Shown: positions 1,621 through 64,000 of the stretch, in pieces
How positions within the stretch are numbered: position 1 is the stretch's first letter
Layout of the letters: each line of letters starts with the position of its first letter
The notes under the pieces: model-generated
The model's database searches: none
Seen by the model: only the letters and a program-made list of their open reading frames with translations
What the model was told of the DNA's origin: nothing
Program-made: the position numbers and the translations under genes
NCBI GenBank assembly: GCA_965644295.1
Contig: CBFFRP010000379.1
Location: forward strand, 99,585 to 163,584
From: Paraphysomonas bandaiensis
Taxonomy: Eukaryota; Protista; Chrysophyceae
Length of the DNA stretch: 64,000 nucleotides
Reading direction: 5' to 3'

Positions 1621-1909
1621 CGACATCCCATCCAGCAGCAACAGAAAGCGATCAACAACCTCAGAGACACCTAAATCACAATTACCAAGCCACAAGCGAC
1701 CTAGGTGGCTAGTTTGAGTTACACGGAGTTTTTACCATTTTTTTTTACTTTTATTTCAATACATGATGCTGGACTAGAAGGATGGTCTCACAATATGGCA
1801 TCTCTGCAGTTCGCTTATTATTGACTAGTGACTGCTCCTCTGGTTTTTACTCTCAGTGTGTATAAGTTCATATTCTCTCTATTATCTACGGTTCACTGAT
1901 TATTTCATT

Positions 1910-40856: not shown

Positions 40857-41734
40857 GTGTGTATCTTGTGGTGTAGTTGTGATGCTCTGAGTGTATGATA
40901 ATAGAAGGAGATCGTGTAGATATGCATACACAGAGAGAAGATACGCAACATCAACTTGAATGAGTGGAGCACAATCGTGTTGCCCCACGAGAAGAATATT
41001 CAAAGATACCACAAGAATATTTGAAAAGATACACGTGTTTGCTCTACTAGTATATGCATCTCTAGAGTTTCTAAAGCAGCCTCCATTTCCAACTATGGAC
41101 AAACCAACCCAACCTGCCTCACAATGTCTGCATCCTACCCTCGTAGACGTACTGTGTATAGTCATATAGTCCTATCTAGATATACAGAGTACATGTGTAC
41201 ATTACACAGCAGATTTCTATAAATACCCGGATTTATGGTTTTACGAGTATAATAATGGCAAAAATATTTCCTAAATACCCTTTTTTTTACTTGTAAAATC
41301 ATGAGTATATTATTATACAAGTTAAAAAAATGGTATTTAGGAAATATTTTTGCCATTATTATACTCGTAAATCCATAAATCCGGGTATTTATAGAAATCC
41401 TCGCTCCTATTGCTGTGTAATCTGTACTCTGTATATCTAGACGTCTACGAGGGTAGGATGCAGACATTGTGAGGCAGGTTGGGTTGGTTTGTCCATAGTT
41501 GGAAATGGAGGCTGCTTTAGAAACTCTAGAGATGCATATACTAGTAGAGCAAACACGTGTATCTTTTCAAATATTCTTGTGGTATCTTTGAATATTCTTC
41601 TCGTGGGGCAACACGATTGTGCTCCACTCATTCAAGTTGATGTTGCGTATCTTCTCTCTGTGTATGCATATCTACACGATCTCCTTCTATTATCATACAC
41701 TCAGAGCATCACAACTACACCACAAGATACACAC

Positions 41735-44035
41735 ATGGCGGATGATGTTAGACGAGCAAATGTTCAGGCGAAATGCCGTATGATTATTGAGTGTCTTCAG
41801 AAGATACTAACGAGTGAAGACACAGCGGCTGATGTTCGGCCCCATATCAGTGACGTGATCAACAGATGCGATACGATCTTAACTAACTTAAACCCAACTA
41901 AAGTTGCTCTCTATGGCGGCGCAGGAGAGGGTAAATCGCGATTCATCAATCAGTTACTTCAAGAGCCTGTTGTTACAGCCGGTGCACAGTCAAAGTCATC
42001 CACTTCAGTGGTGAGTGAGATTGTCTCTCGGCGAGACATGAATACATACAAAGCAACGGTGTATTTCATATCAACCCGAACTATGAAGGAGCGCCTTGAA
42101 TACGTGGCGGAAATGTTGCAGGAGAATATTGCAGTCGAAGGAAGCGCGAAGCAAAATAGCAGACTCGAAGCTATAATGACTGTGATAAGGCACTGCTTCA
42201 GTAGCGACCTTAGCTATGAGAATCCTACTCCACTAACTCCGAACGAAGAAAACCGTGTACTCTTACAGAACATTGGGCGCCAGCCACTAGTGCTTGAGGA
42301 AGACTCCATAAAGGAGTTACGAGAGGCCCTGACGATCTATTCTCATCTACCTGCGGACAATGCGCCACCCGATCAATGGCAGGCCATGACTGTGGACTTT
42401 ATTCGCATCGAAGGAAACTTTGAACACCTTCCCAGTAATGTGATTGTGGTGGATTCTCCGGGTCTCTTTGATGCGGTGGACATGAAGTCCCAGCGAGCCC
42501 TTGAGGCTGTGGATTCTTGGCAGCAGATTTGGTTCACTAATCGGTATAGTAGATTTCTGCAAGGGAAACAAGAGCAACAGGCTTTTCGAGAGCTGTGTGC
42601 GACAGAATTGCGCATGAAAAAAGTTTCTGTTGTATGTACGTATGCCGATGATATGTTGGCCACGGAAGAAGACTGTGACGAAGGGCCCCACACACCAGCA
42701 GATCTGGACTTCGAAGCGATGGAAGCAACTGCCAGAAACCATATCATTGAAGTCTTATGTAGGGGCGACGCGGGCGATGTTCGTAGAGAAGTGCGCATAC
42801 CAGTCGGATTCGTATCGAATGCACGACGTGCGGAAGATCGATTCGGCATGGACTACTGGCGTGGCAGGTTGGGAGACCTTGGAGCAATACAGGGTGAAAC
42901 TTTAAATGCAATGGAGGACGCGCTGACTGAAGTCATCGGCATGCTAAGTGAACTACAAAACTTGCGCATTCCTCCACCTAATTTCCCGCAAGGCAATTTG
43001 GATGGTCTGATCCGAAACATTCGCGAAGCGATTGGGACACTCATGAATGATTACGCCGACACGTTTTCCGTTCGTGACAATATTTCCCTCTTGTATAGTG
43101 ATATCTGTGACACTGGTGATTGGGATTATATTCACGGCAATACTTGGAAAGTGACTATGGACACCGTCCGCAGAGGAATATTTGTTTCGCATTGCCCGAT
43201 GCGTCAATACATTAATATCAACACTGATATAAGCAGCGCGTGGGTTCGAGCTAAGGATAGAAAAATCCGAAATCTGATGGGGCAATTCGCTACATTTAGT
43301 AACGAAGTTCGCCAACTGGAAAATCAGTGGCAAGAAAAGCCAGCAGGATTTGCAAACAGCCTTCGCATCAATGTTGACCGCTGGCAGCACCACACAACTG
43401 AAATAATGCGACATGCGTTCGATGTTGCTACTCTCGCCGATCAGATTCGCAAGCATTTCACTCGCAAGGAAGTATATAAATCAAGAAGAAGACATCCAAG
43501 TAGACGTGAAATTCGTGAACAGGTGACTCGTCTACTGGATAAGCAGCGTTTGTATCGCGAGAACCTGCTGAGGGAAGTAGATGCGTTGCAAGCAGCTATT
43601 CTGTGCTCCACCCAGCCTGTTCAAGTACTGAATCAAAATACTGTGTCTATCATCACCGGATTGATTGACACACTTCAACACCTTCCCGATCAAGATAGGT
43701 TTTATCTCAATAAAGATCGTGTGTCTGTTGACTTCGTTTGCCCGCTGACCATGGAAATAATGAACGATCCTGTGTTGGTTGGGGATGGATGTATAGTTGA
43801 CCGCGATGCTATTAATCGCTATTTTGCTAATCGTCTTGAAGCCCCCTGTCCGCTTTGCGGAAAGATTATCCATATAAATGATATCATTCCTCATGACTTC
43901 CTCAGGCACCGCATCACACTATGGCGGGAGCATAATCGCATTGCAGTGCCCGGTGAGTGGTGGATTGGTTTGTGGGAGGATATTGTTGCTCGACTTCAAA
44001 ATGCTGTGACGACAACAGATAATGAGGAGGTGTAG
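41735..44035 (+). CDS. Dynamin-like GTPase/U-box fusion, copy B (766 aa from MADDVRR)
   Basis: Same motifs as copy A; intact ORF; clustered substitutions relative to A. Confidence 0.85.
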   Translation: MADDVRRANVQAKCRMIIECLQKILTSEDTAADVRPHISDVINRCDTILTNLNPTKVALYGGAGEGKSRFINQLLQEPVVTAGAQSKSSTSVVSEIVSRRDMNTYKATVYFISTRTMKERLEYVAEMLQENIAVEGSAKQNSRLEAIMTVIRHCFSSDLSYENPTPLTPNEENRVLLQNIGRQPLVLEEDSIKELREALTIYSHLPADNAPPDQWQAMTVDFIRIEGNFEHLPSNVIVVDSPGLFDAVDMKSQRALEAVDSWQQIWFTNRYSRFLQGKQEQQAFRELCATELRMKKVSVVCTYADDMLATEEDCDEGPHTPADLDFEAMEATARNHIIEVLCRGDAGDVRREVRIPVGFVSNARRAEDRFGMDYWRGRLGDLGAIQGETLNAMEDALTEVIGMLSELQNLRIPPPNFPQGNLDGLIRNIREAIGTLMNDYADTFSVRDNISLLYSDICDTGDWDYIHGNTWKVTMDTVRRGIFVSHCPMRQYININTDISSAWVRAKDRKIRNLMGQFATFSNEVRQLENQWQEKPAGFANSLRINVDRWQHHTTEIMRHAFDVATLADQIRKHFTRKEVYKSRRRHPSRREIREQVTRLLDKQRLYRENLLREVDALQAAILCSTQPVQVLNQNTVSIITGLIDTLQHLPDQDRFYLNKDRVSVDFVCPLTMEIMNDPVLVGDGCIVDRDAINRYFANRLEAPCPLCGKIIHINDIIPHDFLRHRITLWREHNRIAVPGEWWIGLWEDIVARLQNAVTTTDNEEV

Positions 44036-50160: not shown

Positions 50161-51023
50161 TATTTTATTATATAAAAATATGTAGAAATGAATAATTTTG
50201 AATTAGAATATGACAATTTTTGTAAAAATATGGAATTTTGTTGAAAGTATTAGCATATGAATATTCGAATGAAAGTAGAAGTGCAGCATATTCAATGAAG
50301 TTTAATTAGACACTTGGATTAGGATGGAAGTGGAATGGGAATGAAGTGGTATGTATATACGATCCACTTATATATGATTTATGTATGTTTATGTATTTAT
50401 GTATATCGAGGTATGTATTGTGGGTTGGAGGTGTGTATAGAATACGATTGTAGGTGGTGTGTCTGTGTGCCTGTGTGCCTGTCTGTCGATGTATGTCTGT
50501 ATGTCTGTTGGCACGTATGTACATCGCGCATTCTGTGTACTTACATACATATGTATGTACATATGTGCGTATGTATGTACATACAGTAGGCAGGTACGAT
50601 CGTAGGTGGATGGGTATATACAGCAGTACACATAGGTAGGTATACTCACTGTATAACGTAAACACTCGCCAAATGGGCCCGTATAATTGGTTGCATTACG
50701 TACGGCATTCTTTGTATATTTTTGTTCATAGATGCCTCTAATATTGAGACAATAATTATCTGTATTTCCGCTGTAGTTGTATTGCTGTAATGTAGATAAT
50801 ATTTGCTTCAATTTATTCCCGAAAAATGCAATGTATTCCTATTGGTTGTATGCTATATGAGGCACAGCTCTATATGATACGTGTGTATGTCTATGTATAG
50901 AGGGATATGTATGTATATGTACATACAGTTACAGTTAGTAGAGTTGTTCTTTAACGACTATATGGCATACTAACCAAACTAACACATACATACATACATA
51001 TTTCATCTACTTCATCATTTAAT

Positions 51024-51640: not shown

Positions 51641-52724
51641 TAACCTCTAGTGCCTGAACGTTGTTGATATTTCTTCTTTATTCAATGACAATATGTGTTC
51701 GTTTTTTATTATTCATACTATTATGTCAACTGAGTGGTGTTGAATTGTGTTATCACATACGAAGTAATGGTTACTATGATTTCTGCATGAAGAAGAGTTA
51801 ATACGACAGAAGACAGAACTTTAATGGACTAATATTTTCTGTTCTAGTATACTAACTAAGCAATTTGTCTGAGAATGTAATAGATTGAAAATTTCACAAA
51901 CAAGAAACGAGGAAATCAACGCAAAATATGAAATATTCTCCGCTATTCTAGTCTAGCTACAGAATGAAAGAATTATAGTAGAGGGCATTTCAGCTCTTCT
52001 ACTACTCCTACTGTTATGTGTGTTGCTATTAAATAGAGAAAACGCCCTTTAAATATAATATCGTTCAAACGTGTGTGGTCACACATAGGTCACATACGTA
52101 TAGTGTAAAACTAGAAAGAAAGTATATGCAATATACAGGATCCATCCTATCATGCATGAAAAAAAAGCGGGATGGCTTATACGCTCCGCTTGCAGGCAAT
52201 GGGTCCGTTAAATCGAATCCCTAAAATCTATACCTTATTATTTTCCCATAAAATAAACAAGAATAATTAGAACGCCCGAATTGCGGAGCAATTTGCGACC
52301 AGGGGGGAGGATCTTTAGATCCGGAGGGAGCCTGGTATATTATTCTGAATGTTTTATATTAATGTAATATCAATCTTTTTTATATATCTTTTATGTATAT
52401 CTATATTAATAATTCTTCTTATATTATTTCGATTACTAATATCCTATTTATAAATTGACATTTTGGCATTGGCATTTTATAGTAAAATAATCTGGCTGAA
52501 ATAATATTTTATAAAATAGAGTTTCAAAAGTATAAATTGCCAGCGCCTAAATGCCATCGTCGTTATTATAGTTAAGAGTAGAAAACAGCTCGCCACCATA
52601 CCTACTACACTATCTTATCGTACCCACACAATAGCGTCATCACTGTCTACTTATGTACTATGTCTTTAAGTCATATCGATATTTAAAAAAGGTTTAAAGA
52701 ATTGATTTGTTGATTACATACCTA

Positions 52725-52757
52725 AAGTATTTTTTATATTAAAACTACTTAAAGAAT
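52725..52757 (+). promoter_or_regulatory. Putative viral promoter, exact 33-bp repeat of 53149-53181; core ACTTAAA(G/A)A also at 54957, 55357, 57740
   Basis: The core sits 32-38 nt upstream of the ATG of five + strand non-structural ORFs. Confidence 0.7.
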
Positions 52758-52778
52758 TACAAATATAGTATTATTATA

Positions 52779-53120
52779 ATGAACGAAACTTTAGACAAAC
52801 CTGTTTTGATGATGACAAAATTAGAGCAAGATGAAATAAGACAATCTGATGAATACAAAAAAGCTATCAAGTACATACCTTATCTATTTAAAACCCGCAA
52901 AACCTTTAATAATAGGCAATGGTCTTATGGAATGAAGCACACTGTAGAAAGATACATACGGACTTATAATCTTGAGAACAATTATTACGTTTCTAATAAT
53001 GCTTTAATATTGGGTATGATAGATTCGGGTTTCAAAGCAAAGCATGAATCTAACACTCAAAATTATATATTCAATTTCACAGAAACTATTATCAACAAAA
53101 ATATGAGAAAACAACGATAG
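52779..53120 (+). CDS. Viral hypothetical protein (SYGMKH..ER...YVSN motif)
   Basis: Clean ORF preceded by the shared upstream motif. Confidence 0.7.
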   Translation: MNETLDKPVLMMTKLEQDEIRQSDEYKKAIKYIPYLFKTRKTFNNRQWSYGMKHTVERYIRTYNLENNYYVSNNALILGMIDSGFKAKHESNTQNYIFNFTETIINKNMRKQR

Positions 53121-53208
53121 AGCCTATTTTTATTTATATTGTCAAATTAAGTATTTTTTATATTAAAACTACTTAAAGAATATTTATATATAGTATTATT
53201 ATAAAAGA

Positions 53209-54951
53209 ATGAATTTTGAAAATTCGATTTTACTGACCTCTGAGGAGATTGAACAACTTGTCACTTCTATGTTTCCAAATGACAAGGCAAATACTATTGC
53301 CAAAGGATTATGTAACTACTGCTTCATTAACAAAGGAATGATATACTTTCTTGAATCTAATATTACATATTCACAGCTACCTTTAAGTGTAGGAAAATCT
53401 AAGTTAGTTACTATTATTACGAGTTATATACAGAAATCTTTTCAATCTTTAAGCGAATACAAACAAGAAATATTGAAATTAAAATACGAAAAATTTTACA
53501 AAATATTTCTTAATGCATCTGTATTACAGTATTACGATCAAATAATAACAGTACTAGAAATAAAGAAAGTAGTATTTGATACAACGCCCTATGAGATACA
53601 TTTTAATAATGGATATTATGATCTTCAGCATAATAAATTCAAACAAAGAGAATTACACAAACATTATGTTACGCAATATATTCAAAGAGATTATGTAAAG
53701 TCTAGTGAAGATGAACGCGATAAAATGATGGAACATATTAGAAAAATTTATCCTGATAACGAAGATATGAATTGTATTCTTTTAACGCTTGGTTCTGCTC
53801 TCAGTGGTAAGTCTAACGTTGATCAAGATACGTTATTTCTCTTGGGAGTAGCGTCCGCTGGGAAATCGTTTATAATGGAATTATCACAAAAAACATTTGA
53901 ATGTTACTTTAAAGAATTAAAAAATGACACTTTTAGTCACAACAACAGTAAGATTGATAAAATTTTAAATAGTTTTGCAAACAACCCTCAAATTAGGATT
54001 ACATGGGTTAATGAAATCAAAGATGTTAAAATAGACGAAACACTATTCAAAAAGTTTTGTGAAGGAAAACTACAAACAACTAAATTATATGAAGATGAAT
54101 CTCATGATATAACTCATAATTCAAAATCTTTTATAACGGCTAATACTATGCCTAGTATGAAAATAGATTCCGGTGTAGTTAGACGATTTAAAGGATACAC
54201 GCATGTAAGTAAGTTTGTAGATAATCCTGATGAAGTGGATGAATCTAATCACATTTACCTTAAAGATAAGTACCTACTCGATAATATAGTAAAACACAAT
54301 CTATTGAATGCATGGTTTGACATATTAGCAAAGTATTGTTACAAGTGGTCAAAAGGAGAAAAGCCCAAATTTAATAAGAATTTTACAGAAACAAAAGATT
54401 CAGTTGTCAATACTAATGACATAATGCAAGACTTTATAGATGGTTATTTCATAAAAACAGATAAATCATCTGACAGGATAAGTAAAGAACTAATGGAAAC
54501 ATATTTCAAGAAACAATATCCTGATAAACATTTATCAATGGTACAACTGATAACATCATTAAAAGATAAAGGTTTACACTACAATGCTAGTATGCGCGTT
54601 GACGGTGTTCGTGGTTGTTTTACAAATATTAAACTGCGAATGAAAAAACTTCTTAAAAGTGGCGAAGAAAAACGAACCGATTTGACAGAGTACACAATTC
54701 AATTAGAAAACGAAATAGAAACATATAAAGATGAAATTGAATATCTTAAACAGCAATTAAGTATGTTCAATAGACAATCTAAATCAATCAAGTCAAAAAA
54801 TTCTAAGATGGTCAAAGTTAAGAAAGTTACTTTTGAATATGATACTGACAATGACGATGAACCCATACCCGAAACATTTAAAACAAATATATTTAAACAA
54901 CAAAAAATTGAAAAAGAAGAATTAAATGAAATTATTGATTTACTAAATTAA
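53209..54951 (+). CDS. D5-like superfamily 3 helicase
   Basis: IHFNNGYYDL (D5_N-like), Walker A GVASAGKS, Walker B WVNE, motif C TANTMP, VVRRF. Confidence 0.85.
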   Translation: MNFENSILLTSEEIEQLVTSMFPNDKANTIAKGLCNYCFINKGMIYFLESNITYSQLPLSVGKSKLVTIITSYIQKSFQSLSEYKQEILKLKYEKFYKIFLNASVLQYYDQIITVLEIKKVVFDTTPYEIHFNNGYYDLQHNKFKQRELHKHYVTQYIQRDYVKSSEDERDKMMEHIRKIYPDNEDMNCILLTLGSALSGKSNVDQDTLFLLGVASAGKSFIMELSQKTFECYFKELKNDTFSHNNSKIDKILNSFANNPQIRITWVNEIKDVKIDETLFKKFCEGKLQTTKLYEDESHDITHNSKSFITANTMPSMKIDSGVVRRFKGYTHVSKFVDNPDEVDESNHIYLKDKYLLDNIVKHNLLNAWFDILAKYCYKWSKGEKPKFNKNFTETKDSVVNTNDIMQDFIDGYFIKTDKSSDRISKELMETYFKKQYPDKHLSMVQLITSLKDKGLHYNASMRVDGVRGCFTNIKLRMKKLLKSGEEKRTDLTEYTIQLENEIETYKDEIEYLKQQLSMFNRQSKSIKSKNSKMVKVKKVTFEYDTDNDDEPIPETFKTNIFKQQKIEKEELNEIIDLLN

Positions 54952-54993
54952 AAAGTACTTAAAAAATTATTATATATAGTTTAGTTATATATA

Positions 54994-55347
54994 ATGGTAA
55001 AAAAGTCTGTTTACACTAAAAAGATTATCAAAGAGAAAACTGTGAAGCACGGAAAAGAACGAACAATACAATTGTACAGAAATGACAAAAAGAATAATAT
55101 CTCTGCTCAAGATGTACGCGATATTGTACAAGGATTGCAAAATTCAGATCCAAATAAACTATTTATGGTGCGCGCTTTAAACGCAGCCAGATGGAGCACA
55201 CTCAAAGGATTTTATAGTGACCTAAATGTTGATGATGAAGAAGATTATTATGCAAATAGAGTCAAAGACACAGATAAGTTTTCAAAGTTCTCACAATTGC
55301 AAATTACTGCCTTTGTACCCGATGATATTGAGGATAATTTTGTTTAA
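54994..55347 (+). CDS. Viral hypothetical protein
   Basis: Clean 117-aa ORF with the upstream motif. Confidence 0.7.
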   Translation: MVKKSVYTKKIIKEKTVKHGKERTIQLYRNDKKNNISAQDVRDIVQGLQNSDPNKLFMVRALNAARWSTLKGFYSDLNVDDEEDYYANRVKDTDKFSKFSQLQITAFVPDDIEDNFV

Positions 55348-55392
55348 TATAAAACTACTTAAAAAATAATTAATATAATAATAATATATAGA

Positions 55393-56643
55393 ATGTATTT
55401 TTATTATAAAATGAATAGTGCCATGTACAGAGTTTTAGATGTTAAGAACTACATCTTTTCAGACATGTCACATGAGAAATGTATGAAATTAGAATATGCG
55501 TATCAATTGTTTAAAGGATACGAAGCATCAGATGAAGGAATAAAACAGTATGGTAAAGATTTCAGGGCGTGGTGTAGAGAGATGAGATTTACTAAAAACT
55601 TGTCAATTGATTACAAAAAATTTCATTCACACTTGGGCGCTGTTAAATGTGTCTTTATGCAATATTGTAAAGGAAAATATGAACATCATAAAAAGATTAA
55701 AAAAATAGAAAATGGATACTTTCAAGATTGTTACAATGCAGGTTTACAGTTTTGCGAGCCGGGAGTATTTAATTCATATGGATACGATTTTAGTGGATTT
55801 TATCCATCTCTATTGATAGATGATAACTTTTTAATACCAACAAAGAAAGGAAAAGAAAAATACTTAAAGAAGTTAAAAAAACGTTCTAAACTTAAATACG
55901 GAATATACAGAGTTAAAATTACATCTGATAATAAAAACTTTAAAAAGATATTTTCATTTTCTCCAAAACATACATATACTCATATATCTCTAAAACATGC
56001 AATGAAATGCAAAAAGAAATTTGATGTAAATATTGAGTTAATTGTTGATGATAAACCAAACGCATACATATACAGAACAAAAGATTTAGTAAAAGCAAGT
56101 GAAATATTTGCAGAATGGTACAATCGTTTAATTCAGTTAAAAAAGTTGTATCCCAACAACAAACTTGTAAAGCATTTGATGTCATCGCTATGGGGAACGT
56201 TAACGCAGTACAATATGATATATAAATCATATGATGAATTAGAAAATGAAGGTTATGACTGGGGATATACAAAGGAATGCGATTATATTGTACAGGATAA
56301 GTATATGTCAGCACATAGTAACGATGAAGAGAATTATAAACTTTTAGATTCAAATAATCCTTTTAAATACAATATTAGACTACTTCCGTTTTTGCTTTCA
56401 TATGCAAGAAACAAAATAGCAGAAGTGGCATTGAAGGATATTGACAACGTCATTCGTATTCACACAGATAACGTTACTTTTAAGAAAGATCCAAAATTAG
56501 ATATACCCAATCTATTGCGAGAAGATAAAACTTCGGGTATGATTGAATGGAGACATGTAAATGGATACAATCATATATGTCCAAAGTGTGACGAGCGACT
56601 TAAATACAAGGACATAAAAACACATATTGAAGAATGTTGTTAA
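55393..56643 (+). CDS. Minimal family-B (protein-primed-type) DNA polymerase with a C-terminal zinc finger
   Basis: Motif A YDFSGFYPS, motif B KHLMSSLWG, motif C RIHTDNV; C-terminal CPKC...H...C. Confidence 0.75.
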   Translation: MYFYYKMNSAMYRVLDVKNYIFSDMSHEKCMKLEYAYQLFKGYEASDEGIKQYGKDFRAWCREMRFTKNLSIDYKKFHSHLGAVKCVFMQYCKGKYEHHKKIKKIENGYFQDCYNAGLQFCEPGVFNSYGYDFSGFYPSLLIDDNFLIPTKKGKEKYLKKLKKRSKLKYGIYRVKITSDNKNFKKIFSFSPKHTYTHISLKHAMKCKKKFDVNIELIVDDKPNAYIYRTKDLVKASEIFAEWYNRLIQLKKLYPNNKLVKHLMSSLWGTLTQYNMIYKSYDELENEGYDWGYTKECDYIVQDKYMSAHSNDEENYKLLDSNNPFKYNIRLLPFLLSYARNKIAEVALKDIDNVIRIHTDNVTFKKDPKLDIPNLLREDKTSGMIEWRHVNGYNHICPKCDERLKYKDIKTHIEECC

Positions 56644-57685
56644 CGTTTTTTCTTTTTCTTAATGCTTTTATCAAAATCATCTAATAACTTTTTATCAACA
56701 GTTTTTAGTAAATCACTTTTAGCATACCATCCCGCGTCTTTTTTTAACTCTCCATACATCCAAACTTGATAGTGATTTTCGCCATCAAAAAATCGCTTAT
56801 CAAGAATCTTTTAATTTCAACTTGTTCTTCTTCGGCATCAGGTGCAGGCATTAGTTCATCTTCTGTAAAGGATGCATTTTTAATACCACTTAACATATAT
56901 CTGTATGTAACTTTTCCAGGATAATACAATATTTGTTTAATTTGTACAGGTATAGGGTCAAAGCGGAAGTCACCTTCTCGGAACACATCAGAATTAATAG
57001 TTTCATTTAAAGCATTTTTGGGTTTGTCTAATTTTCGATACACAAAGTCACCCACATTATATTTAGGTTTTGATTTGGTTGTGTCTGGAACAGGATACTT
57101 ATGTGTTGCCAAGTCAATATTAGACACATCTTTCTTCCTTAGTTTATTCAAATCTATTCTTAGCTTATCAACTATATCAGTCCATTCTCTATAAATTTTT
57201 CCAGTTTTTAACTCAATGCTATTCATATAACCATTAAAAAATCTGCCTAATGTTCTATTTAAACTCTCCACTGCTGACATTTGTTTATGTCGTCCCGCTA
57301 ATGCAACGCTATGTAAAATACTTTCGTCGTACAAATATTTTGCAAAACCTTTTTTAAATGATGCACCGCCATCTGTTCGAATAGAAGCGTACGGTTTATT
57401 AAGATGATTACGTTGAAATATAGCCTTTATTGCTTTTAAAGTTTCATCAGAGTTTTCTGTTTTCATTGGTTCCATATCAAACTCATCAGTTGCCAAATCA
57501 ACAACAACTAATAAATATTGATATCCTTTTTTATCTTTTGGTAAATGCAACACATCCGCCATAAAGTTATAATCTTCTTTAAGTGGTATATTATCTTTTA
57601 TTCGATTATATCTTTTCTTCTTGGTTTGTTTACTTGGTCTTGTTAATGTTTCATCGATATCATATTTTTTAATAAGATCATTCAT
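56640..57685 (-). CDS. Retroviral-type (rve) integrase with a C-terminal chromodomain after a single-base frameshift at ~56810
   Basis: DDE residues in FMADVL, IRTDGGASF and AVESLNRTL; KYNVGDFV; the alternative frame gives ILDKRFFDGENHYQVWMYGELKKDAGW to TAA at 56640. Confidence 0.88.
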
Positions 57686-57775
57686 AATGATATATAATAC
57701 ACATATAAAAAATATAAATAAACTAACTTAGTAAAAAACACTTAAAAAGAAATTAATATATAAGAGTATAGTATA

Positions 57776-58120
57776 ATGAACAAAGAATCAAGAAGAGAGT
57801 ATAATAAAAAATACTACGCTGAAAAGAAAAGCGCAATATGTGCAAAGCTATTTGAAAAAGAAGAATGTTTAAAATGTGGCAGAATAGTATCACATCAAAA
57901 TATGAAGAAACATCAAGCATCAAAAGTATGCATGACAACGGCAGAGAGAAAACAAGCAAAGTTAAATGTTTCAAGCGAATTAGAAGCAATAAAACAAGAA
58001 TTAGAAGACATTAAGAAATCTAAACAAGATTCATTGATGTATTGTTGGGGATGTCAAGAATCATTTACAGAATCTCAAAAAACTAAACATAAATGTTCAA
58101 GTAAACATAGAAATCTTTAA
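57776..58120 (+). CDS. Viral small zinc-finger protein
   Basis: CLKCGRIVSHQNMKKHQASKVC and CWGC...KHKC; upstream motif present. Confidence 0.7.
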   Translation: MNKESRREYNKKYYAEKKSAICAKLFEKEECLKCGRIVSHQNMKKHQASKVCMTTAERKQAKLNVSSELEAIKQELEDIKKSKQDSLMYCWGCQESFTESQKTKHKCSSKHRNL

Positions 58121-58401
58121 GTAAAATTTATTATAAATGTATCATCATCGATAACTTTATATTTTTTCTGTTTTTTCCTTTTGGTATCCTTTTTTGTGTG
58201 TACCCATTTCTTATATTCTTTGTTCTCTTTAAGTGTTTTAATTTTAGTATAATAATAGTTTCTAGCATACTCATTACATTTAGCTTTATTATTAAAATAG
58301 TAAATTCTATTTCGAATCAATAATGTGTCTCTGTTCTTTAAGTAATATTCATGATTATACTGTTTAAGTTTCTCTTTATTCATTATTATATCAATAATCA
58401 A
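58117..58401 (-). CDS. Viral basic hypothetical protein (Y/K-rich coil)
   Basis: KEKLKQYNHEYYLKNRD pattern; stop codon overlaps that of the convergent ORF (TTAA). Confidence 0.55.
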   Translation of the reverse strand: MIIDIIMNKEKLKQYNHEYYLKNRDTLLIRNRIYYFNNKAKCNEYARNYYYTKIKTLKENKEYKKWVHTKKDTKRKKQKKYKVIDDDTFIINFT

Positions 58402-58535
58402 TAAAATTATAAAATGGCAAGTATCATAGGTAATAGTAATATTTTAAAAGCTTTTGTTATAGCTATATCAACGGCTCGCTCTGTTGCTGACCGCAAAAAA
58501 ACGTGCTACTCTCTTCCAATTACGCCTAATAAAAT

Positions 58536-58964
58536 TCATTTTTTAATTCGTGGAAGTAATATCTCAACCATTTTGACAATTAATTCGATGTCATTATTGA
58601 AATATTTTTTAACCGCTTCAACTACAACCGCTAGTTTTCTATCACCAGATTTCGGTTTTGTGATAAAATTTTCAACTGCTTGACAAGTAAATAATAGAAT
58701 TTGTTCATTGTATTTATTTGAATCAGGATCAAAGAGATCTAAAACAGATTGAATTTTAGTAACTAATTCGTACTGTTGATTTTCAAGTTTAATCTCTTTA
58801 ATTTTGTCAGAAAGTCCATTTAACTCAACATTAAATAGTTTTTTGTCTGGAATCGATCGATGTCTGAAACTACATTCACGTTTAACTTCAGCTTCTATCT
58901 CTTTAGTTTCTTCAACTCCTAGAGGTCTGTTGTTGTCGTTGTCTTTAATAACTACTTTTCTCAT
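58536..58964 (-). CDS. Viral hypothetical protein
   Basis: 142-aa ORF with TATATAA directly before the ATG. Confidence 0.6.
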   Translation of the reverse strand: MRKVVIKDNDNNRPLGVEETKEIEAEVKRECSFRHRSIPDKKLFNVELNGLSDKIKEIKLENQQYELVTKIQSVLDLFDPDSNKYNEQILLFTCQAVENFITKPKSGDRKLAVVVEAVKKYFNNDIELIVKMVEILLPRIKK

Positions 58965-59003
58965 TTATATAATTGTGACACAAAATATTTAAACATTTTA
59001 TAT

Positions 59004-60108
59004 TTAAGCGAAACCCTCATCTGAGATATCACTGCGCCATTCATCCCAGCCAAATTCATTTTCTTTTCTGGGAGTAAAATATTCTGCTGGTACCGGTGTG
59101 CTTGGTGGCTTGATTTTATGAGTTCGGACATGATGCTTTGTTCTTAGTTTATGCATGTTCTCATCCTCTATTTCATCTTTTTGTTTTATATTCATTTCTG
59201 TTCGTCTTGTTCGACTCATTTGTCCGGTAATTGGTTCCATATTGACAAACAAGCCTTCTAATCCTTGTCTCATGTGTCTTTTTTCATAGTGATTTTTGGC
59301 TCTAATTGCTTTATCGGCATCATAGTCCTCTGCCTCCATACCTTCTCTGTTCAATCTTTCGCTTTTCTTGTCTTTACTACGTTGAACTAATTGTTTTGTT
59401 GCTTCTTTCTGTTTTTGAGTTCTGCCTTTTGGTTTAGCTAATTTAGTTTGTGGCTCTAAAGGCAAATCCTCAACATCATCATCTAATTCTTCAATCTGAT
59501 CATTTGATTTAAATTCTAATGGCTGTGTATACATCAAATCATTGCTTGTAGATATTGGTGGTGCGGGGTTGATGGTATTATCTGCCTTGCTGGATATATC
59601 AATGGCTCTTCTACGTTGCGCACGTTTTTTGTTTTTGAGATGTTGGACCCATAATTAAATTTCCAGTTGGAGATTTAGAGACTTTAATATTTCCAGATGC
59701 GTACCCGTCATTAGCTAATTTTGCAAATTTGAAAGTCTCTTTTAACTCTTTCTGGTACATTTTCAAGTCTCAACACCTCCTCATTGGCGGGGTTCTTGGG
59801 ATTATTTCTAGCTTCATTTAATTGTCCTCCGCAATATATCAATCTCTCTTCTGTCAATGGCTGAGCCATGTAGCAGCACCTACACCGGAAACACCTCCTA
59901 TTCCGCCCCCGCCAAATTGCTTATTTACACCTGTGCCAAAATTAGTTTTCTTTTTCCCTTTAGCTTTGCGCTTTTTCTCTTTGTTCTTTTTCTTTTTAAA
60001 ATCAAATCTGGTGCAATACCATGTAAGTTTATGTAAGTCGTCAAGAGATAAATAGATTTTCTCTTCTCCTTCATTAGTATTTATATAATAGTGAAAGATA
60101 GATATCAT
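59004..60108 (-). CDS. Viral hypothetical protein(s), frameshifted
   Basis: ORFs 59004-59537 and 59854-60108 with coding-like sequence between them. Confidence 0.45.
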
Positions 60109-60663
60109 GCGAAATAATCATCTGAATTAAATGTCACATGTCTTTGTGTGGCGGGTTGTCTTTGTATAGATACTTGTTCATCTTCTAGATTCTGATTCAG
60201 ATTCTGATGATTCAACAACAATTGTTCTCTTTTTTTGGTTTTCTTTTTGGTGGTCTTTTAACAACTATAACCTCTTCATCTGATTCTGAATCATCATATA
60301 TTATTTTTTGTCTAGGAGCTCGTTTAACAACAGGCCTTGGTGCTGGTTTTGGTTCGGGATCTGTCTTTGTTACTGATTGCTCTTCTTGATGTTTGGCTAA
60401 TAATTGAGCATAATGTAATTCCTTTTCTTGTTGCCTCTTTAAAGCATTCTCTGCTCTCTTTTGTCTAGCCTTTTCAAATGCTTGTAGTTGGGCTCAGTGT
60501 TTTAGGCTTTGTCATCACTCTTTCTCTTTTTCACAGGAGCGGACTGAATAGGTGCTTGGGGTGTGTTAACAGGCTCCTCTGGTATGGTTGCGAGTTGTTT
60601 GACCTGTCTTTTCGGCTTTGTTAAAGGAATTGATTCTTCTATATATTCTTCGGGTTCTACCAT
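60105..60663 (-). CDS. Viral K/P/E-rich protein, frameshifted
   Basis: MVEPEEYIEESIPLTKPKR...AQLQAFEKARQKRAEN...YDDSESDEEVIVVKRPPKRK; TATATA before the ATG. Confidence 0.55.
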
Positions 60664-60719
60664 TATATAGTTACTGCAGAAAAAATATTTACAAAATATT
60701 AATATATTTACTCATAATA

Positions 60720-61473
60720 TAGTGAGAAATAACAGAAACACCTTCTGATTTGCCTAATACAGCACCTATTAAAGAAGTTATGGACGTCTATATACCAAAC
60801 ATCAATGAACACTTACCACATCGAAATGGGTTTATATATACTTTAATAGGGATCTGGTGGATCAGGAAAAACAAGTTTATTATTGTCAATGTTTAAGTCA
60901 TCTAGATTTTACAGAGCCAAATTTGATAATATATAACGCCTAATCACCCCCACAGAGTAGCTTTCTCAGTGTTCGCGAGTCATCCATTTGGAACGCATGG
61001 AAAGGTATATCATGAATTAACACCGGAATTATTGGATATAATATATGATGAATTATCAAACTTAAAAGAAAGTAATATAGAGCAGGGTATTCCTCCAGAA
61101 TATAATTTAGTTATTATTGATATGATTATGCAAATCATTTAAAAGACAATGTTTTAATTTAAACATTTGAACAGAATGCTTATCAAAGCAAGACATTTAA
61201 ATACAGCTTGTGTTTTACGTTACAACCATATAATTTATTTCCATTAACATTGAGAAAACAAATAACTAACATGACTTTGTTTAAACCTAAAATCAACAAG
61301 AGTGGACAGTTGTAACATCAGAACTATTAAATATGAAACAAAAGATAATGCTTTGTTGAAGCTGCGATGATTATGTTTATGGTAAAAGGCTATAATCATT
61401 TAGATGTTGATACAGTTGAAAACAAATTACTTCAAAACTTTAACACGCTTATCGTAAAGTTGGTAATCACTTA
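60720..61473 (+). CDS. A32/FtsK-HerA-like genome packaging ATPase (multiple frameshifts; not in the ORF track)
   Basis: GFIYTLI-GSGGSGKTSLL (Walker A ~60850-60880), LVII-DDYA (Walker B), ARHLN, YNHLDVD. Confidence 0.82.
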
Positions 61474-61812
61474 ATATCCAATTATTTATACTATAAACGA
61501 ACAGGCGATGACAGAAAATGAGTTCAACCGAATTGCAATGTGAATTCTGAAAGGCGCAGTATTATTTCATCCGACTCAGATGAGGTGAACTACATGGATG
61601 AACTTGAACTATCAGGTCAGACCAGGCGCTTAGATGAAGTTATAGATTTATAATATGTTAGCCACTACTAGCGATTCTTTTAAAAGACAGAGGAATAGAG
61701 TGCACGTATTAAAGCAATATGCGAAGTGGACCAGGTTTTCACATTCCAGGATGGCAACCAGTGCTCGAAACTATTGCTGAAAATATAAGTGATTCTCCAC
61801 TGAGAGGAGTTA

Positions 61813-62588
61813 ATGAATAGAAAAATATATGATTGTAATAATATAGATGAGCGATAAACTATGTATCTTTTTAAATAGTAAGAGTGCAAAAATAGATATA
61901 TATCAGGTAATACATCAGATTGTATATTTCATTTACCTGTTATCAACATACCAAAACATAGGAAGATATTTTGTTCGGTTCAAACGGCGATGATACCTTA
62001 TTCATTTTATAACATTAGTTCAATTAATAACACTTTAAAATATACAGTCAATGGTGGTGGAGTACAAACATTAGCTCATTACAGAAGGAAATTATAACGT
62101 TATTAATTACCTTGATAACAGCAATCACAACTGGCATACCCGCTTTAACAATCACATATAACAGCAAAACAAACAAATTAACCTCTTCACATAGTACATG
62201 TGATTTTACATTTGAATCAAATAGTACTTGTTTTGAAGTTCTTGGTTTTACAGATGATACAACATACTCGTCAACGTCACAAGTGCTTACAAGTACCATA
62301 TCAATTAATTTATTCACAATTAGAAATGTTTATGTTACATCTGATAACTTTCAAATCAATAATATTAACAATTCAACACCTAATAAAAGTAATACCTTAT
62401 GCAGTATTCCTGTAGATTCTTCCCATCACAGTATGATCAGTTACTCTAATATATACAATGTTCGTAATATGATCTATAATGTTCATAATTTAACAAATTT
62501 ACATGTTAAACTCACGGATCAAGATGATGATGTGCTTGATCTGAATGGAGTTCATTGGTCTTTAACTCTAGAGCTTGATATAGAATAA
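61813..62588 (+). CDS. Minor capsid (penton) protein, frameshifted
   Basis: FLNSK, TSDCIF, AMIPYSFYNI, beta-rich middle, C-terminal LTDQDDDVLDLNGVHWSLTLELD; lies between ATPase and MCP. Confidence 0.72.
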
Positions 62589-62612
62589 TTAAAATATAGT
62601 GTATATATATAC

Positions 62613-63060
62613 ATGAAACTAGGTAAGAAGTTTGATCGAGGTGTTCGAAAGCTTGGTCACAAAATAGATAAGAAGGCTCATCAATTAGGGCATAAATCTC
62701 ACGACGTACTTCAAAAAGCACAAAAGATCAACCGTAAAGCGGTTAATACTGGATCAAAAGTTTTACACAACGTTAGAAAGGGGGGTTAGATATAGCCGAC
62801 GCTGTTTTAGGTACAGCGGTAGATGCTGGCGCTGGAAATGTCCCTGCACTTGGAGATGGTGTAGCTTTAGCAAGTAAAAGGATTGCATGGTGCTAGAGAA
62901 AGGGCTTGATAAAGGAGATAAGGCCTTACACAAATATAAAGAACGCAAGTAACAAAGCTCTTAAACATGCCAACAAACATGCTAATGATCTCGAAAAGTT
63001 CAATGTGCGCAAAAAGTACCGCACAAGCAACCGCAGATGAAAGATGGATCTCGCATAAAC
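62613..63060 (+). CDS. Small basic amphipathic virion-associated protein, frameshifted
   Basis: MKLGKKFDRGVRKLGHKIDKKAHQLGHKSHDVLQKAQK; located between mCP and MCP. Confidence 0.45.
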
Positions 63061-63128
63061 AATATATAAAACGCATTTATTTTGAAATTATATAGATATT
63101 TATTTTATCCATATAATATTGTTACTCA

Positions 63129-64000
63129 TGATACCTAAAAACCTATTATACACTAACAAGCGATCAAGTGCCTATTGTCGTAACTTTTCCACTCACATAC
63201 AACCATTGAATGGCGTTGGAAACTACTTAGATGGGCAGACTATCAATCATTAATATCCCCACAGCTCAGAATCTCGTCATGGCAGGGTCTGAATCACTCT
63301 TAAAATTTGACTTTGACAGTAACTAATGGAGCAGGAGCAAATGCCTTATGCCCGTTTAGATAGAGCTGGAGCTCACGGTTGCATTCAAAGGCTTAGACTT
63401 TATCATGGTTCTCAATTACTTGAAGACATTGATAATTACGGTAATCTTGTAGGCATGCTTATGTCATTACAACAATCTGGAGATTCTGCTAAAGGTAAGT
63501 TAAACATTATGGCTGGGTTAACGAGAGATTCCTTTTGTGATGTGACTGATTCAACAGTAGCAGATGCAGGTACTCTATTAACAAAAATTCAAGGGGCAAC
63601 CAACCAAGTTTTTACTATTAACTCAGGTGAAAGACTTATTGATGATGGACAAACAACACAGTTTGCAGATATCGCCGCCGCGGGAGATACTCTTACTAGA
63701 ACTTACACCATTAACCTTTTATCTATTATTGGTTCTCTTTCTGATAAATACATTCCTCTCTTTGCAATGACAAGCGCACCTCTTAGACTTGAACTTCAAC
63801 TAGTTTCTAGCCCAGCGAAATTCATTTGTTCTGAACTTGCATTGTCCTCTTTTAAAGTAAATAACTGTGAATTTATTGCTCAATTTATGGAGCTGGAAGT
63901 GAAGCAATGAATATAATCAATAATTCCGCACCTTGGTGGAAGACTTGAGTGGGTGGTTCCTGCATGGAGGAACTACGTGTACAATGCCACTTTAAATAAT
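63129..64000 (+). CDS. Double jelly-roll major capsid protein of PLV type, frameshifted, runs off the window
   Basis: MIPKNLLY...IQPLNG...INIPT...ESLLKF, then RLDRAGAHGCIQRLRLYHGSQLLEDIDNY, KYIPLFAM, LRLELQL. Confidence 0.8.

What the first reader, a model, noticed from the sequence alone, without database searches (positions are those of the whole stretch)
52160..64000. Endogenous Polinton-like virus combining rve integrase, minimal PolB and a PLV-type capsid module
Seen: a compact intronless gene block (helicase, PolB, integrase, ATPase, mCP, MCP) directly next to intron-rich host genes. Two convergent gene pairs share overlapping TTAA stops (56640-43, 58117-20). Established: this gene set defines Polinton-like viruses and virophage relatives, and some parasitise giant viruses and protect host populations. 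Inference: the MCP N-terminus resembles the PLV type rather than animal Mavericks. No maturation protease is visible in the window. The replication module is essentially intact, so the integration may be recent.
Basis: partly seen in the sequence, partly recalled or inferred. Interest (0 to 1): 0.8.

Follow-up and report, generated by a model that had tools for sequence, protein, structure and literature searches.

The report
Polinton-like virus beside host genes
The last 11-12 kb of the window is a small double-stranded DNA virus of the Polinton-like kind, with a mavirus-style replication module, sitting next to ordinary eukaryotic genes; it is a new example of a known kind, and most of the apparent damage to its capsid genes looks like sequencing error.

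Summary
The gene block is real. From about 52.3 kb to the window end lie, in order: a small ORF, a D5-type superfamily-3 helicase, a conserved 117-aa ORF, a 416-aa polymerase, a convergent rve integrase, several small genes, an A32-type packaging ATPase, a penton protein and the first ~290 codons of a major capsid protein.

- **Polymerase:** it models at pLDDT 96. Its best structural match is the truncated protein-primed PolB of mavirus, then phi29 polymerase.
- **Capsid protein:** a relative 81% identical to the window's capsid piece models as a double jelly roll.
- **Relatives:** marine metagenome contigs, including Tara-labelled ones, are collinear with the element at 93-98% nucleotide identity.

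This architecture (palm-only pPolB, S3H helicase, rve, PLV capsid module) is already described.

New here: every gene right of about 59 kb is frame-broken as the sequence stands. The breaks are about 66 insertions of 1-4 nt (53 of them single bases) of random composition. Substitutions there still favour third codon positions, and none of these insertions occurs in the 4 kb to the left. That fits unpolished long-read consensus better than natural decay.

Integration is plausible but unproven. No terminal repeat or target duplication can be seen, and the right end lies beyond the window. The host is an unidentified eukaryote.

The parts
52300..52778 (.). AT-rich non-coding left end of the element. 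The boundary is approximate and lies somewhere between about 51.65 and 52.72 kb. It includes a ~50-nt promoter block at 52725-52780.
   Evidence: GC falls from about 0.37 to about 0.27 near 52.3 kb. Only the promoter block is conserved in relatives. No TIR or TSD could be defined.
52779..53120 (+). 113-aa ORF of unknown function, intact.
   Evidence: phrog_9576 E 2.5e-7. No similarity to the 148-aa first gene of L015.
53209..54951 (+). D5-type superfamily-3 helicase, 580 aa, intact. No primase domain was detected.
   Evidence: D5_N E 3e-4. PHROG primase-helicase E 2.7e-17 over residues 110-429. 69% identical relative L019. Only its last ~100 aa match the L015 helicase.
54994..55347 (+). Conserved 117-aa ORF immediately upstream of the polymerase, intact. 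Candidate partner of the polymerase (inference).
   Evidence: Homologues sit in the same position in L003 (48% identity), L004 (37%) and L015/L020.
55393..56643 (+). [quoted passage not shown]
   Evidence: 180 homologues of about 400 aa. Invariant D132, N256, K260 and D359. AF2 pLDDT 96. Foldseek matches to mavirus pPolB (E 4e-25, TM 0.75) and phi29 DNAP (E 5e-9). pN/pS 0.12 against L001.
56640..57685 (-). rve (retroviral-type) integrase. Broken: one frameshift relative to intact 348-aa homologues.
   Evidence: Pfam rve E 1.5e-7. Intact 348-aa homologues in L001 and L015. Break count.
57776..58120 (+). 114-aa Cys/His-rich ORF, open. It is 24 codons shorter than the 138-aa homologue (in-frame length difference).
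58117..58383 (-). Homologue of an 88-aa gene, open. Its stop overlaps the previous gene (TTAA).
   Evidence: phrog_17714 E 6e-6.
58463..58964 (-). Homologue of a 167-aa gene of unknown function. Broken: 2 frameshifting indels.
59004..60074 (-). Homologue of a 358-aa gene of unknown function. Broken: 7 frameshifting and 2 in-frame indels.
60105..60663 (-). Homologue of a 184-aa gene of unknown function. Broken: 4 frameshifting indels.
60722..61474 (+). A32-type (FtsK/HerA) genome-packaging ATPase. Broken: 16 frameshifting indels and 1 in-frame indel.
   Evidence: Intact 243-aa relatives hit Pfam Pox_A32 (3.9e-15 for L003). Break counts.
61497..61895 (+). Homologue of a 126-aa gene. Broken: 19-20 frameshifting indels and 3-4 sense-to-stop changes. 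The alignment is poor in this stretch.
61847..62588 (+). Penton (minor capsid) protein. Broken: 3-4 frameshifting indels.
   Evidence: The 158-aa piece is 97% identical to intact 244-aa P0241. Weak DUF5901 hit in relatives. Break counts.
62613..63058 (+). Homologue of a 145-148-aa gene lying between penton and MCP. Broken: 7 frameshifting indels.
63128..64000 (+). Major capsid protein, first ~290 of ~470 codons, cut by the window end. Broken: at least 3 frameshifting indels in the first 151 codons, or 7 stops if read in one frame.
   Evidence: tblastn to more than 100 MCP-family proteins from residue 1. Stops counted, indels. The 194-aa piece is 81% identical to P0308, which models as a double jelly roll.

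Best explanation
Window ~52.3-64.0 kb is the left two-thirds of a Polinton-like virus genome that is contiguous with eukaryotic chromosomal DNA, most likely through rve-integrase-mediated integration.

Shown:
- **Replication module, mavirus type:** a separate superfamily-3 helicase, a palm-only protein-primed PolB without a recognisable exonuclease or N-terminal terminal-protein/vOTU part, and an rve integrase.
- **Morphogenetic module, PLV type:** an A32-like packaging ATPase, a penton protein and a ~470-aa double-jelly-roll MCP. No protease was detected.
- **Lineage:** the same lineage circulates in marine plankton, with collinear contigs at 93-98% identity. It has evolved under purifying selection.

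Inferred:
- The element replicates by strand-displacing, protein-primed or self-primed synthesis, with the helicase compensating for the lost exonuclease.
- The five plus-strand genes of the replication block share one promoter of their own.
- The element integrates and persists in the host genome like mavirus and other PLVs.
- The many frame breaks right of ~59 kb are mostly consensus errors of an unpolished long-read assembly, not biological decay. If so, the copy is probably young and largely intact.
For: **Gene identities**
- See (polymerase; ATPase; penton; MCP).

**One collinear element**
- L015 and L016 span helicase to penton in the same order as window 54795-62105.

**Selection**
- pN/pS is 0.12 in the polymerase.
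- Substitutions are enriched at third codon positions even in the broken genes: penton 7/8/25, MCP 4/2/14, ATPase 8/5/17.

**Technical origin of the breaks**
- 66 extra-base events against a handful of missing-base events.
- Insertion sizes are 1-4 nt. Inserted bases are 48% GC in a background of about 32% GC.
- Only 40% of single-base insertions equal a flanking base, which is about what chance gives.
- There are none between 54.8 and 59 kb, then 5-30 per kb up to the window end.
- Natural relatives differ from one another by 0-2 gaps, all multiples of three.

**Promoter**
- The motif has 8 matches in the window against 0.9 expected. Five lie 27-38 nt upstream of starts of the plus-strand genes (52779, 53209, 54994, 55393, and the ATPase start). 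The block is conserved upstream of relatives' genes.

**Literature**
- Mavirus pPolB has only an exonuclease remnant and is accompanied by a separate S3H (PMC11161782).
- Palm-retaining truncated pPolBs and DUF5906 helicases define 'pMVRE group 1' (PMC13215967).
Against: - No TIR, TSD or right end can be seen, so integration is not demonstrated.
- No reads were available, so the error hypothesis is indirect. The insertion density is not a simple ramp towards the end: it peaks at 61-62 kb.
- The integrase and the 167-aa gene carry single-base deletions within the otherwise clean stretch.
- The window's own helicase does not reach the Pfam D5_N cut-off (21.5 against 22.4 bits).
- The rve hit is just under its cut-off (32.0 against 32.6 bits).
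- The MCP fold was shown on a relative, not on the window's own broken and truncated copy.
- The host is unidentified.
Confidence: 0.66

Rival explanations
1. The element is integrated but old in its right half. The capsid module has decayed naturally while the replication and integration genes are maintained, a drift towards a capsid-less, transposon-like lifestyle. An alternative version is a young copy that recombined with an old decayed copy.
For: - Every gene from ~59 kb rightwards is frame-broken while helicase and polymerase are intact.
- A shift of endogenous PLVs towards a transposable-element lifestyle has been proposed for OmPLV (PMC12721341).
- Capsid-less pMVREs exist (PMC13215967).
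- Mosaicism is evident in the helicase.
Against: - Natural small indels are usually deletion-biased and slippage-associated (general knowledge). Here insertions outnumber deletions about 9:1, are 1-4 nt long, of near-uniform base composition, and not tied to flanking bases.
- Substitutions in the broken genes remain enriched at third positions, with almost no nonsense substitutions. That is not expected after enough neutral time to collect ~60 indels.
Confidence: 0.13
2. The host-virus junction is an assembly chimera. A free or episomal PLV genome present in the culture or sample was joined to the end of a host contig.
For: - The virus-like part lies at the end of the window and ends in low-quality sequence.
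- Independent metagenome contigs of relatives begin just upstream of the helicase or its small upstream gene, as if a physical genome end lay there.
- No TIR or TSD was found.
Against: - The element encodes an rve integrase.
- Integration of PLVs in protist genomes is common (PMC13215967; bioRxiv 10.64898/2026.06.19.733378).
- The ~7 kb across and right of the junction is clean sequence.
Confidence: 0.17
3. The element is better filed as a mavirus-like virophage than as a PLV.
For: - The polymerase is structurally closest to mavirus pPolB.
- S3H plus rve is the mavirus replication and integration set (PMC11161782).
- Sputnik and mavirus MCPs are among the fold matches.
Against: - No cysteine protease was found in the window or in fuller relatives.
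- The MCP is ~470 aa. By fold it matches PBCV-1 and iridovirus MCPs at least as well as virophage MCPs.
- No sequence-level hit to the solved mavirus or Sputnik MCPs.
- Replication modules are known to swap between groups (bioRxiv 10.64898/2026.06.19.733378).
Confidence: 0.08

Closest known systems
pMVRE group 1 / mavirus-type replication module (Wei et al. 2026, PMC13215967; Krupovic et al. 2024, PMC11161782)
   Same: It has an exonuclease-less, palm-retaining pPolB, with best fold match to mavirus pPolB. It has a separately encoded superfamily-3 helicase; relatives hit DUF5906. It has an rve integrase.
   Different: - The polymerase is only 416 aa. It matches the C-terminal ~400 columns of the 617-aa mavirus enzyme, so the N-terminal terminal-protein and vOTU part described for mavirus is not in this protein (inferred from lengths).
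- The capsid module is not virophage-like and no protease was found.
- Group membership by phylogeny was not tested.
Aquatic Polinton-like viruses (Yutin et al. 2015, PMC4642659; Bellas & Sommaruga 2021, PMC7805220)
   Same: It has the MCP, penton and A32-ATPase core and no protease. Its MCP family has more than 1100 members of about 470 aa, many on 17-21-kb aquatic contigs. Marine relatives exist.
   Different: The literature read here says most PLVs lack pPolB and often replace rve with tyrosine recombinases (PMC13215967; bioRxiv 10.64898/2026.06.19.733378). This element has both pPolB and rve.
Tlr1-type PLVs and transpovirons with pPolB-S1H fusion (PMC11161782); OmPLV of Oxyrrhis marina (PMC12721341)
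   Same: Its pPolB palm lacks the exonuclease and is accompanied by a helicase. The copy is endogenous in a protist-like genome.
   Different: Here the helicase is superfamily 3 and encoded separately. The polymerase is a stand-alone ~400-aa protein, not a 1000-1500-aa fusion.
Maverick/Polinton elements of animals
   Same: It has an rve integrase, a protein-primed PolB lineage, a DJR capsid and a packaging ATPase.
   Different: It has no full-length pPolB with exonuclease and no adenain-like protease was detected. MCP family members come from aquatic metagenomes. No sequence of an animal element was fetched or compared, by rule.

Membership tests
Polinton-like viruses (PLV) | Double-jelly-roll major capsid protein | tested here: met
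   The window's MCP pieces align from residue 1 to ~290 of the family. The 194-aa piece is 81% identical to P0308. The P0308 model (pLDDT 83) matches PBCV-1 Vp54, Sputnik, PRD1 P3 and mavirus MCP at E 1e-12 to 6e-16. The window's own copy is truncated and frame-broken and was not modelled.
Polinton-like viruses (PLV) | Penton (minor capsid) protein | tested here: inconclusive
   97% identity to an intact 244-aa family encoded just upstream of the MCP gene, with one small gene between. It is fused to the MCP in L003. Only a weak DUF5901 hit was found. The fold was not modelled.
Polinton-like viruses (PLV) | A32/FtsK-HerA-type packaging ATPase | tested here: met
   Intact 243-aa relatives aligned to 60722-61474 hit Pfam Pox_A32. 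The window copy is frame-broken.
Polinton-like viruses (PLV) | Genome of about 14-40 kb bounded by terminal repeats | not testable with these tools
   The right end lies beyond base 64000. No repeat partner is in the window.
Polinton-like viruses (PLV) | MCP/ATPase phylogenetic placement among named PLV groups | not tested
   No named reference came back from any search.
pMVRE group 1 (mavirus-related pPolB elements) | Palm-retaining truncated pPolB | tested here: met
   416 aa. Invariant motif A, B and C residues. Fold match to mavirus pPolB at TM 0.75 and to phi29. No invariant acidic residue in the first 100 positions.
pMVRE group 1 (mavirus-related pPolB elements) | DUF5906-type superfamily-3 helicase | tested here: inconclusive
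   The window helicase hits D5_N just below cut-off, and PHROG primase-helicases. DUF5906 is hit by the helicases of relatives L003, L004 and L015, not by the window's own protein.
pMVRE group 1 (mavirus-related pPolB elements) | Placement in the group-1 clade of the pPolB tree | not tested
   No reference sequences were at hand.
Maverick/Polinton (Polintoviricetes) | Full-length pPolB with exonuclease and N-terminal TP/vOTU domains | tested here: not met
   The protein and 180 homologues are about 400 aa. They align to the C-terminal ~400 columns of mavirus pPolB.
Maverick/Polinton (Polintoviricetes) | Adenain-like cysteine maturation protease | tested here: not met
   No protease family was hit by any ORF of the window part or of relatives L004, L012 and L015. 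The element's right end was not seen, and only sequence profiles were used.
Virophages (Maveriviricetes) | Virophage-type MCP and cysteine protease; dependence on a giant virus | tested here: inconclusive
   Sputnik and mavirus MCPs are fold matches but not the best ones. There is no sequence-level match and no protease. Dependence on a giant virus is not testable from sequence.

The most novel reading that the evidence does not exclude
The ~400-aa stand-alone polymerase is a minimal protein-primed PolB that has shed both its exonuclease and its covalently attached terminal-protein/vOTU part. Two readings follow. Either the conserved ~117-aa ORF always found just upstream supplies the priming protein in trans, or the enzyme starts DNA synthesis without a primer, as pipolin PolBs do. 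This would be the smallest self-sufficient PolB replication set known in eukaryotic viruses, carried by an abundant marine PLV lineage that can now be tied to a host genome.
Probability: 0.2. Interest if true: 0.6.

Novelty: new member of a known kind. Interest (0 to 1): 0.35.

Why it matters
- **A host link.** The element ties a host genome to a PLV lineage seen in several marine metagenomes, including Tara-labelled assemblies, at 93-98% identity. Host links are rare for PLVs.
- **A clean example of a compact architecture.** It shows the palm-only pPolB, S3H helicase and rve replication module joined to a PLV capsid module, and it illustrates module swapping inside one lineage. The helicase body differs from that of the closest relatives. 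A more distant relative (L003) has a penton-MCP fusion.
- **A caution for endogenous-virus surveys.** Read naively, the capsid genes would be scored as pseudogenes and the element as a decaying fossil. The pattern of the breaks points to assembly error instead.

Tried and rejected
- **Alternative genetic code** as the reason for in-frame stops in the MCP. Rejected: the stops are a mix of TGA and TAA, neighbouring genes are open in the standard code, and the few single-stop interruptions in host ORFs use all three stops.
- **Introns in the capsid genes.** Rejected: the DNA is collinear with intact relatives and has no long gaps.
- **Deaminase- or RIP-like hypermutation.** Rejected: the substitution spectrum is balanced and ts/tv is about 1.2.
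- **Integration next to a tRNA or other RNA gene.** No tRNA or Rfam family is in the window.
- **A hairpin or terminal structure at 52150-52350.** Not significant, z -1.4.
- **In-window TIR search.** Only low-identity AT-rich pairs were found.
- **Sequence-level PDB searches** with the polymerase profile, the MCP profile and the helicase. No hits.
- **IMG/VR scans** with the polymerase and the helicase. No relatives.
- **Host identification.** Exact protein look-ups and paper searches for sample and assembly accessions led nowhere.
- **The large all-protein HMMER search** was not used. Family scans and word searches had already settled the proteins.
Full report
**What is there**

The last 11.7 kb of the window differs in composition from the rest: GC is 0.28-0.35 against about 0.39. 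The drop lies near 52.3 kb. To the left are pieces of ordinary eukaryotic genes:
- cullin, formin FH2, eIF5, a WASH-complex CCDC53 subunit and Myb;
- a DEAH-helicase HA2 domain;
- an inverted pair of U-box/dynamin-like genes;
- a copia-type RT.

These genes are split into several ORF pieces, which fits introns. No tRNA or Rfam family is present.

To the right, from 52779 to 58383, six closely packed ORFs are open: a 113-aa ORF, the helicase, a 117-aa ORF, the polymerase, a 114-aa ORF and the 88-aa homologue. The integrase among them is open except for one frameshift. The next gene, the 167-aa homologue at 58463-58964, has two frameshifts. About 95% of 52779-58964 is coding.

**Replication and integration genes**

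- **Helicase.** The 580-aa protein (53209-54951) matches D5_N (E 3e-4, just under the Pfam cut-off). It matches PHROG primase-helicase families over residues 110-429 (E 2.7e-17). No primase domain was detected.
- **Polymerase, sequence level.** The 416-aa protein (55393-56643) has no Pfam, PHROG or PDB sequence hit. It belongs to a family of at least 180 proteins, nearly all about 400 aa. In an alignment of 44 members the invariant residues include D132, N256, K260 and D359. These lie in stretches that read like PolB motifs A, B and C. No acidic residue is invariant in the first 100 positions.
- **Polymerase, structure level.** The AlphaFold model is very confident (pLDDT 96, pTM 0.91). Among solved structures it matches phi29 DNA polymerase best (E 5e-9), then archaeal PolBs. 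Among predicted viral structures it matches the 617-aa pPolB of Cafeteriavirus-dependent mavirus (E 4e-25, TM 0.75, rmsd 3.7 over 402 columns). The next match is a 339-aa polymerase of a Harvfovirus.
- **What this makes the polymerase.** It is a palm-only protein-primed PolB of the mavirus type, without the extra N-terminal part of the mavirus enzyme. The literature already describes such 'palm-retaining truncated pPolBs', and their association with DUF5906 superfamily-3 helicases and rve integrases (PMC13215967). It also describes the loss of the exonuclease together with gain of a helicase (PMC11161782). Loss of the first Asp of motif C, as here, is reported to be compatible with activity (PMC11161782).
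- **Integrase.** The minus-strand gene (56640-57685) hits Pfam rve (E 1.5e-7). Intact 348-aa homologues show weak similarity to foamy-virus integrase cores.

**Capsid module**

The penton piece 62112-62588 is 97% identical to an intact 244-aa protein found on seven marine contigs. Fetching those contigs and their neighbours gave two kinds of relative:
- L006-L011, L017 and L018, which are Tara-labelled or PRJEB4352 marine metagenome assemblies;
- L015 and L016, two 9.2-9.4-kb contigs from independent assemblies.

L015 and L016 carry, in the same order as the window: helicase, 117-aa ORF, 416-aa polymerase, 348-aa integrase, four small or medium genes, a 184-aa gene, an A32-type ATPase, a 126-aa gene and the penton. 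The window's 54795-62105 is collinear with them, so left and right halves belong to one element.

Mapping the relatives' gene bounds onto the window gives:
- ATPase 60722-61474;
- a 126-aa gene 61497-61895;
- penton 61847-62588;
- a 145-aa gene 62613-63058;
- MCP from 63128 to the window end, about 290 of about 470 codons.

The MCP family has more than 1100 members of about 470 aa, many on 17-21-kb contigs. It has no Pfam or PDB sequence hit.

A 471-aa member (P0308, from L012) is 81% identical to the window's longest MCP piece. It was modelled at pLDDT 83. It matches the double-jelly-roll capsid proteins of PBCV-1, Singapore grouper iridovirus, EhV-201, Sputnik, PRD1, faustovirus and mavirus (E 1e-12 to 6e-16).

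No protease family was hit in the window or in the fuller relatives L004, L012 and L015.

**State of the genes**

Counts are relative to the nearest intact relatives. Positions are not listed, by rule.

| Gene | Breaks |
|---|---|
| Integrase | 1 frameshift |
| 167-aa homologue | 2 frameshifting indels |
| 358-aa homologue | 7 frameshifting, 2 in-frame indels |
| 184-aa homologue | 4 frameshifting indels |
| ATPase | 16 frameshifting, 1 in-frame indel |
| 126-aa homologue | 19-20 frameshifting indels, 3-4 sense-to-stop changes (poor alignment) |
| Penton | 3-4 frameshifting indels |
| 145-aa homologue | 7 frameshifting indels |
| MCP | at least 3 frameshifting indels in the first 151 codons, or 7 stops if the 291 codons are read in one frame |

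The helicase, the 117-aa ORF, the polymerase, the 114-aa ORF and the 88-aa homologue are open.

**Why the breaks look technical**

Five observations point the same way.
- **Direction.** The window has about 66 non-redundant extra-base events (53 of 1 nt, the rest 2-4 nt) against a handful of missing-base events.
- **Composition.** The inserted bases are near-uniform (A24 G24 T20 C16, 48% GC) in sequence of about 32% GC. Only 21 of the 53 single-base insertions equal a neighbouring base, roughly the chance expectation.
- **Location.** There are no such events between 54.8 and 59 kb of the same element. From 59 to 64 kb there are 5, 12, 30, 6 and 6 per kb.
- **Substitutions.** Inside the broken genes, substitutions are still concentrated at third codon positions (penton 7/8/25, MCP 4/2/14, ATPase 8/5/17, 145-aa gene 5/5/18). 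Sense-to-stop substitutions are almost absent. That is the signature of divergence under purifying selection, not of a long neutral decay.
- **Control.** The metagenomic relatives differ from one another by 0.4-3.5% with 0-2 gaps, all multiples of three.

Random short insertions laid over an otherwise selected coding sequence are what an unpolished, insertion-prone long-read consensus gives. Natural decay is generally deletion-biased and slippage-associated (general knowledge). I therefore read the capsid half as probably intact in the organism and badly rendered in the assembly. This remains an inference until reads are examined.

To read the window's own capsid genes through the breaks would have required joining frames. 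That step was left out.

**Age and selection**

- Window 55075-57775 is 98.1% identical to a 2.7-kb metagenome contig (L001) with one indel.
- Window 54795-58029 is 97.6% identical to L015.
- In the polymerase, 16 synonymous and 9 non-synonymous differences give pN/pS of 0.12.
- Divergence is uneven. The integrase is nearly identical to L001, while the polymerase has pS of 0.07.
- The body of the helicase is unrelated at sequence level to that of L015, although the last 45 residues are identical.
- A 69%-identical helicase was found on another contig, L019.

The lineage is thus a recombining, selected population, and the window copy is a recent member of it.

**Regulatory motif**

A 15-nt motif (consensus written) occurs 8 times in the window against 0.9 expected. 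Seven of those lie in the element. Five lie 27-38 nt upstream of start codons, at 52779, 53209, 54994, 55393 and the ATPase. A close variant sits before 57776. Each is followed by a TATATA-like box just before the ATG. The roughly 50-nt block is the only non-coding sequence conserved with relatives, and it recurs before their genes too. This suggests one dedicated promoter class. Whether it is read by the host or by a helper giant virus is not known.

**Integration**

The element is contiguous with host DNA, and the junction region is clean sequence. However:
- the left terminus cannot be placed more precisely than 51.65-52.72 kb;
- no terminal inverted repeat or target duplication can be recognised;
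- the right end is outside the window;
- contigs of relatives from independent assemblies begin shortly upstream of the helicase or its small upstream gene.

That last point fits a genome end or a collapsed terminal repeat there. Integration is the most likely reading, given the rve integrase and how common integrated PLVs are. A chimeric join cannot be excluded without reads.

**Comparison and novelty**

By function, the element combines a mavirus-like replication and integration set with a PLV capsid set.

By membership:
- It meets the PLV core, with MCP and ATPase met and the penton by homology only.
- It fails two defining features of Maverick/Polintons: the full-length pPolB and the protease.
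- It matches the published description of pMVRE group 1, except that phylogenetic placement was not tested and the window's own helicase does not hit DUF5906.

It is a new member of a known kind.

The most interesting open point is how a 400-aa polymerase without a terminal-protein domain initiates synthesis. The conserved 117-aa ORF directly upstream is a candidate partner.

Noticed in passing
window 52742, 53166, 54952, 55352, 57734, 60682 (plus strand): A shared promoter-like block lies 27-38 nt upstream of start codons. It is an A-rich 15-nt motif followed by a TATATA-like box. It is conserved upstream of genes in relatives L015, L016 and L001. There are 8 matches in the window against 0.9 expected.
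   Followed up: partly
window 59000-64000: About 66 random 1-4-nt insertions relative to intact relatives, and none in the preceding 4 kb of the same element. This suggests a low-quality, unpolished long-read stretch at this end of the window. Other parts of this assembly may have similar stretches.
   Followed up: yes
window 53209-54951 versus L015:609-2210: The helicase of the window and that of its closest relatives share only the C-terminal ~100 residues; the last 45 are identical. This marks a recombination point inside the gene and a swapped helicase body together with the upstream small gene.
   Followed up: partly
L003:15411-17375: In a more distant relative on a 62-kb metagenome contig, penton and MCP are fused into one 654-aa ORF. 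Residues 1-238 match pentons and residues 231-654 match MCPs.
   Followed up: partly
L007:1492-2106: A Tara relative carries an extra 204-aa gene between the 145-aa gene and the MCP. The window lacks it.
   Followed up: no
fold search: The second-best structural match of the polymerase is a 339-aa 'DNA polymerase' of a Harvfovirus, a giant-virus metagenome bin (E 2e-22, TM 0.76 on the target). This hints at a related element inside, or exchanged with, a giant virus genome.
   Followed up: no
L004:6717-7160, L004:7232-8641 and L015:104-550: DUF5710 occurs in the first gene of L015, in a small ORF upstream of the L004 polymerase, and at the N-terminus of the 469-aa L004 polymerase. It is absent from the window's proteins. 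Its function is unknown.
   Followed up: no
window 38565-41165 (-) and 41489-44035 (+): Two head-to-head paralogous host genes of ~850-866 aa combine a dynamin-like GTPase region with a C-terminal U-box. Both are long uninterrupted ORFs.
   Followed up: no
window 28971-30329: A host ORF has five repeated matches to the C-terminal part of the WASH-complex subunit CCDC53 (E 1e-69), an unusual internal repetition.
   Followed up: no
window 155-1714: A copia-type reverse transcriptase (RVT_2, E 2.5e-35) is interrupted by in-frame stops. It is a decayed retrotransposon at the left edge of the window.
   Followed up: no
window 50490-50930: Imperfect TATGTATGTACATA-type repeats and palindromes lie in the host flank about 1.5 kb left of the element.
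   Followed up: no
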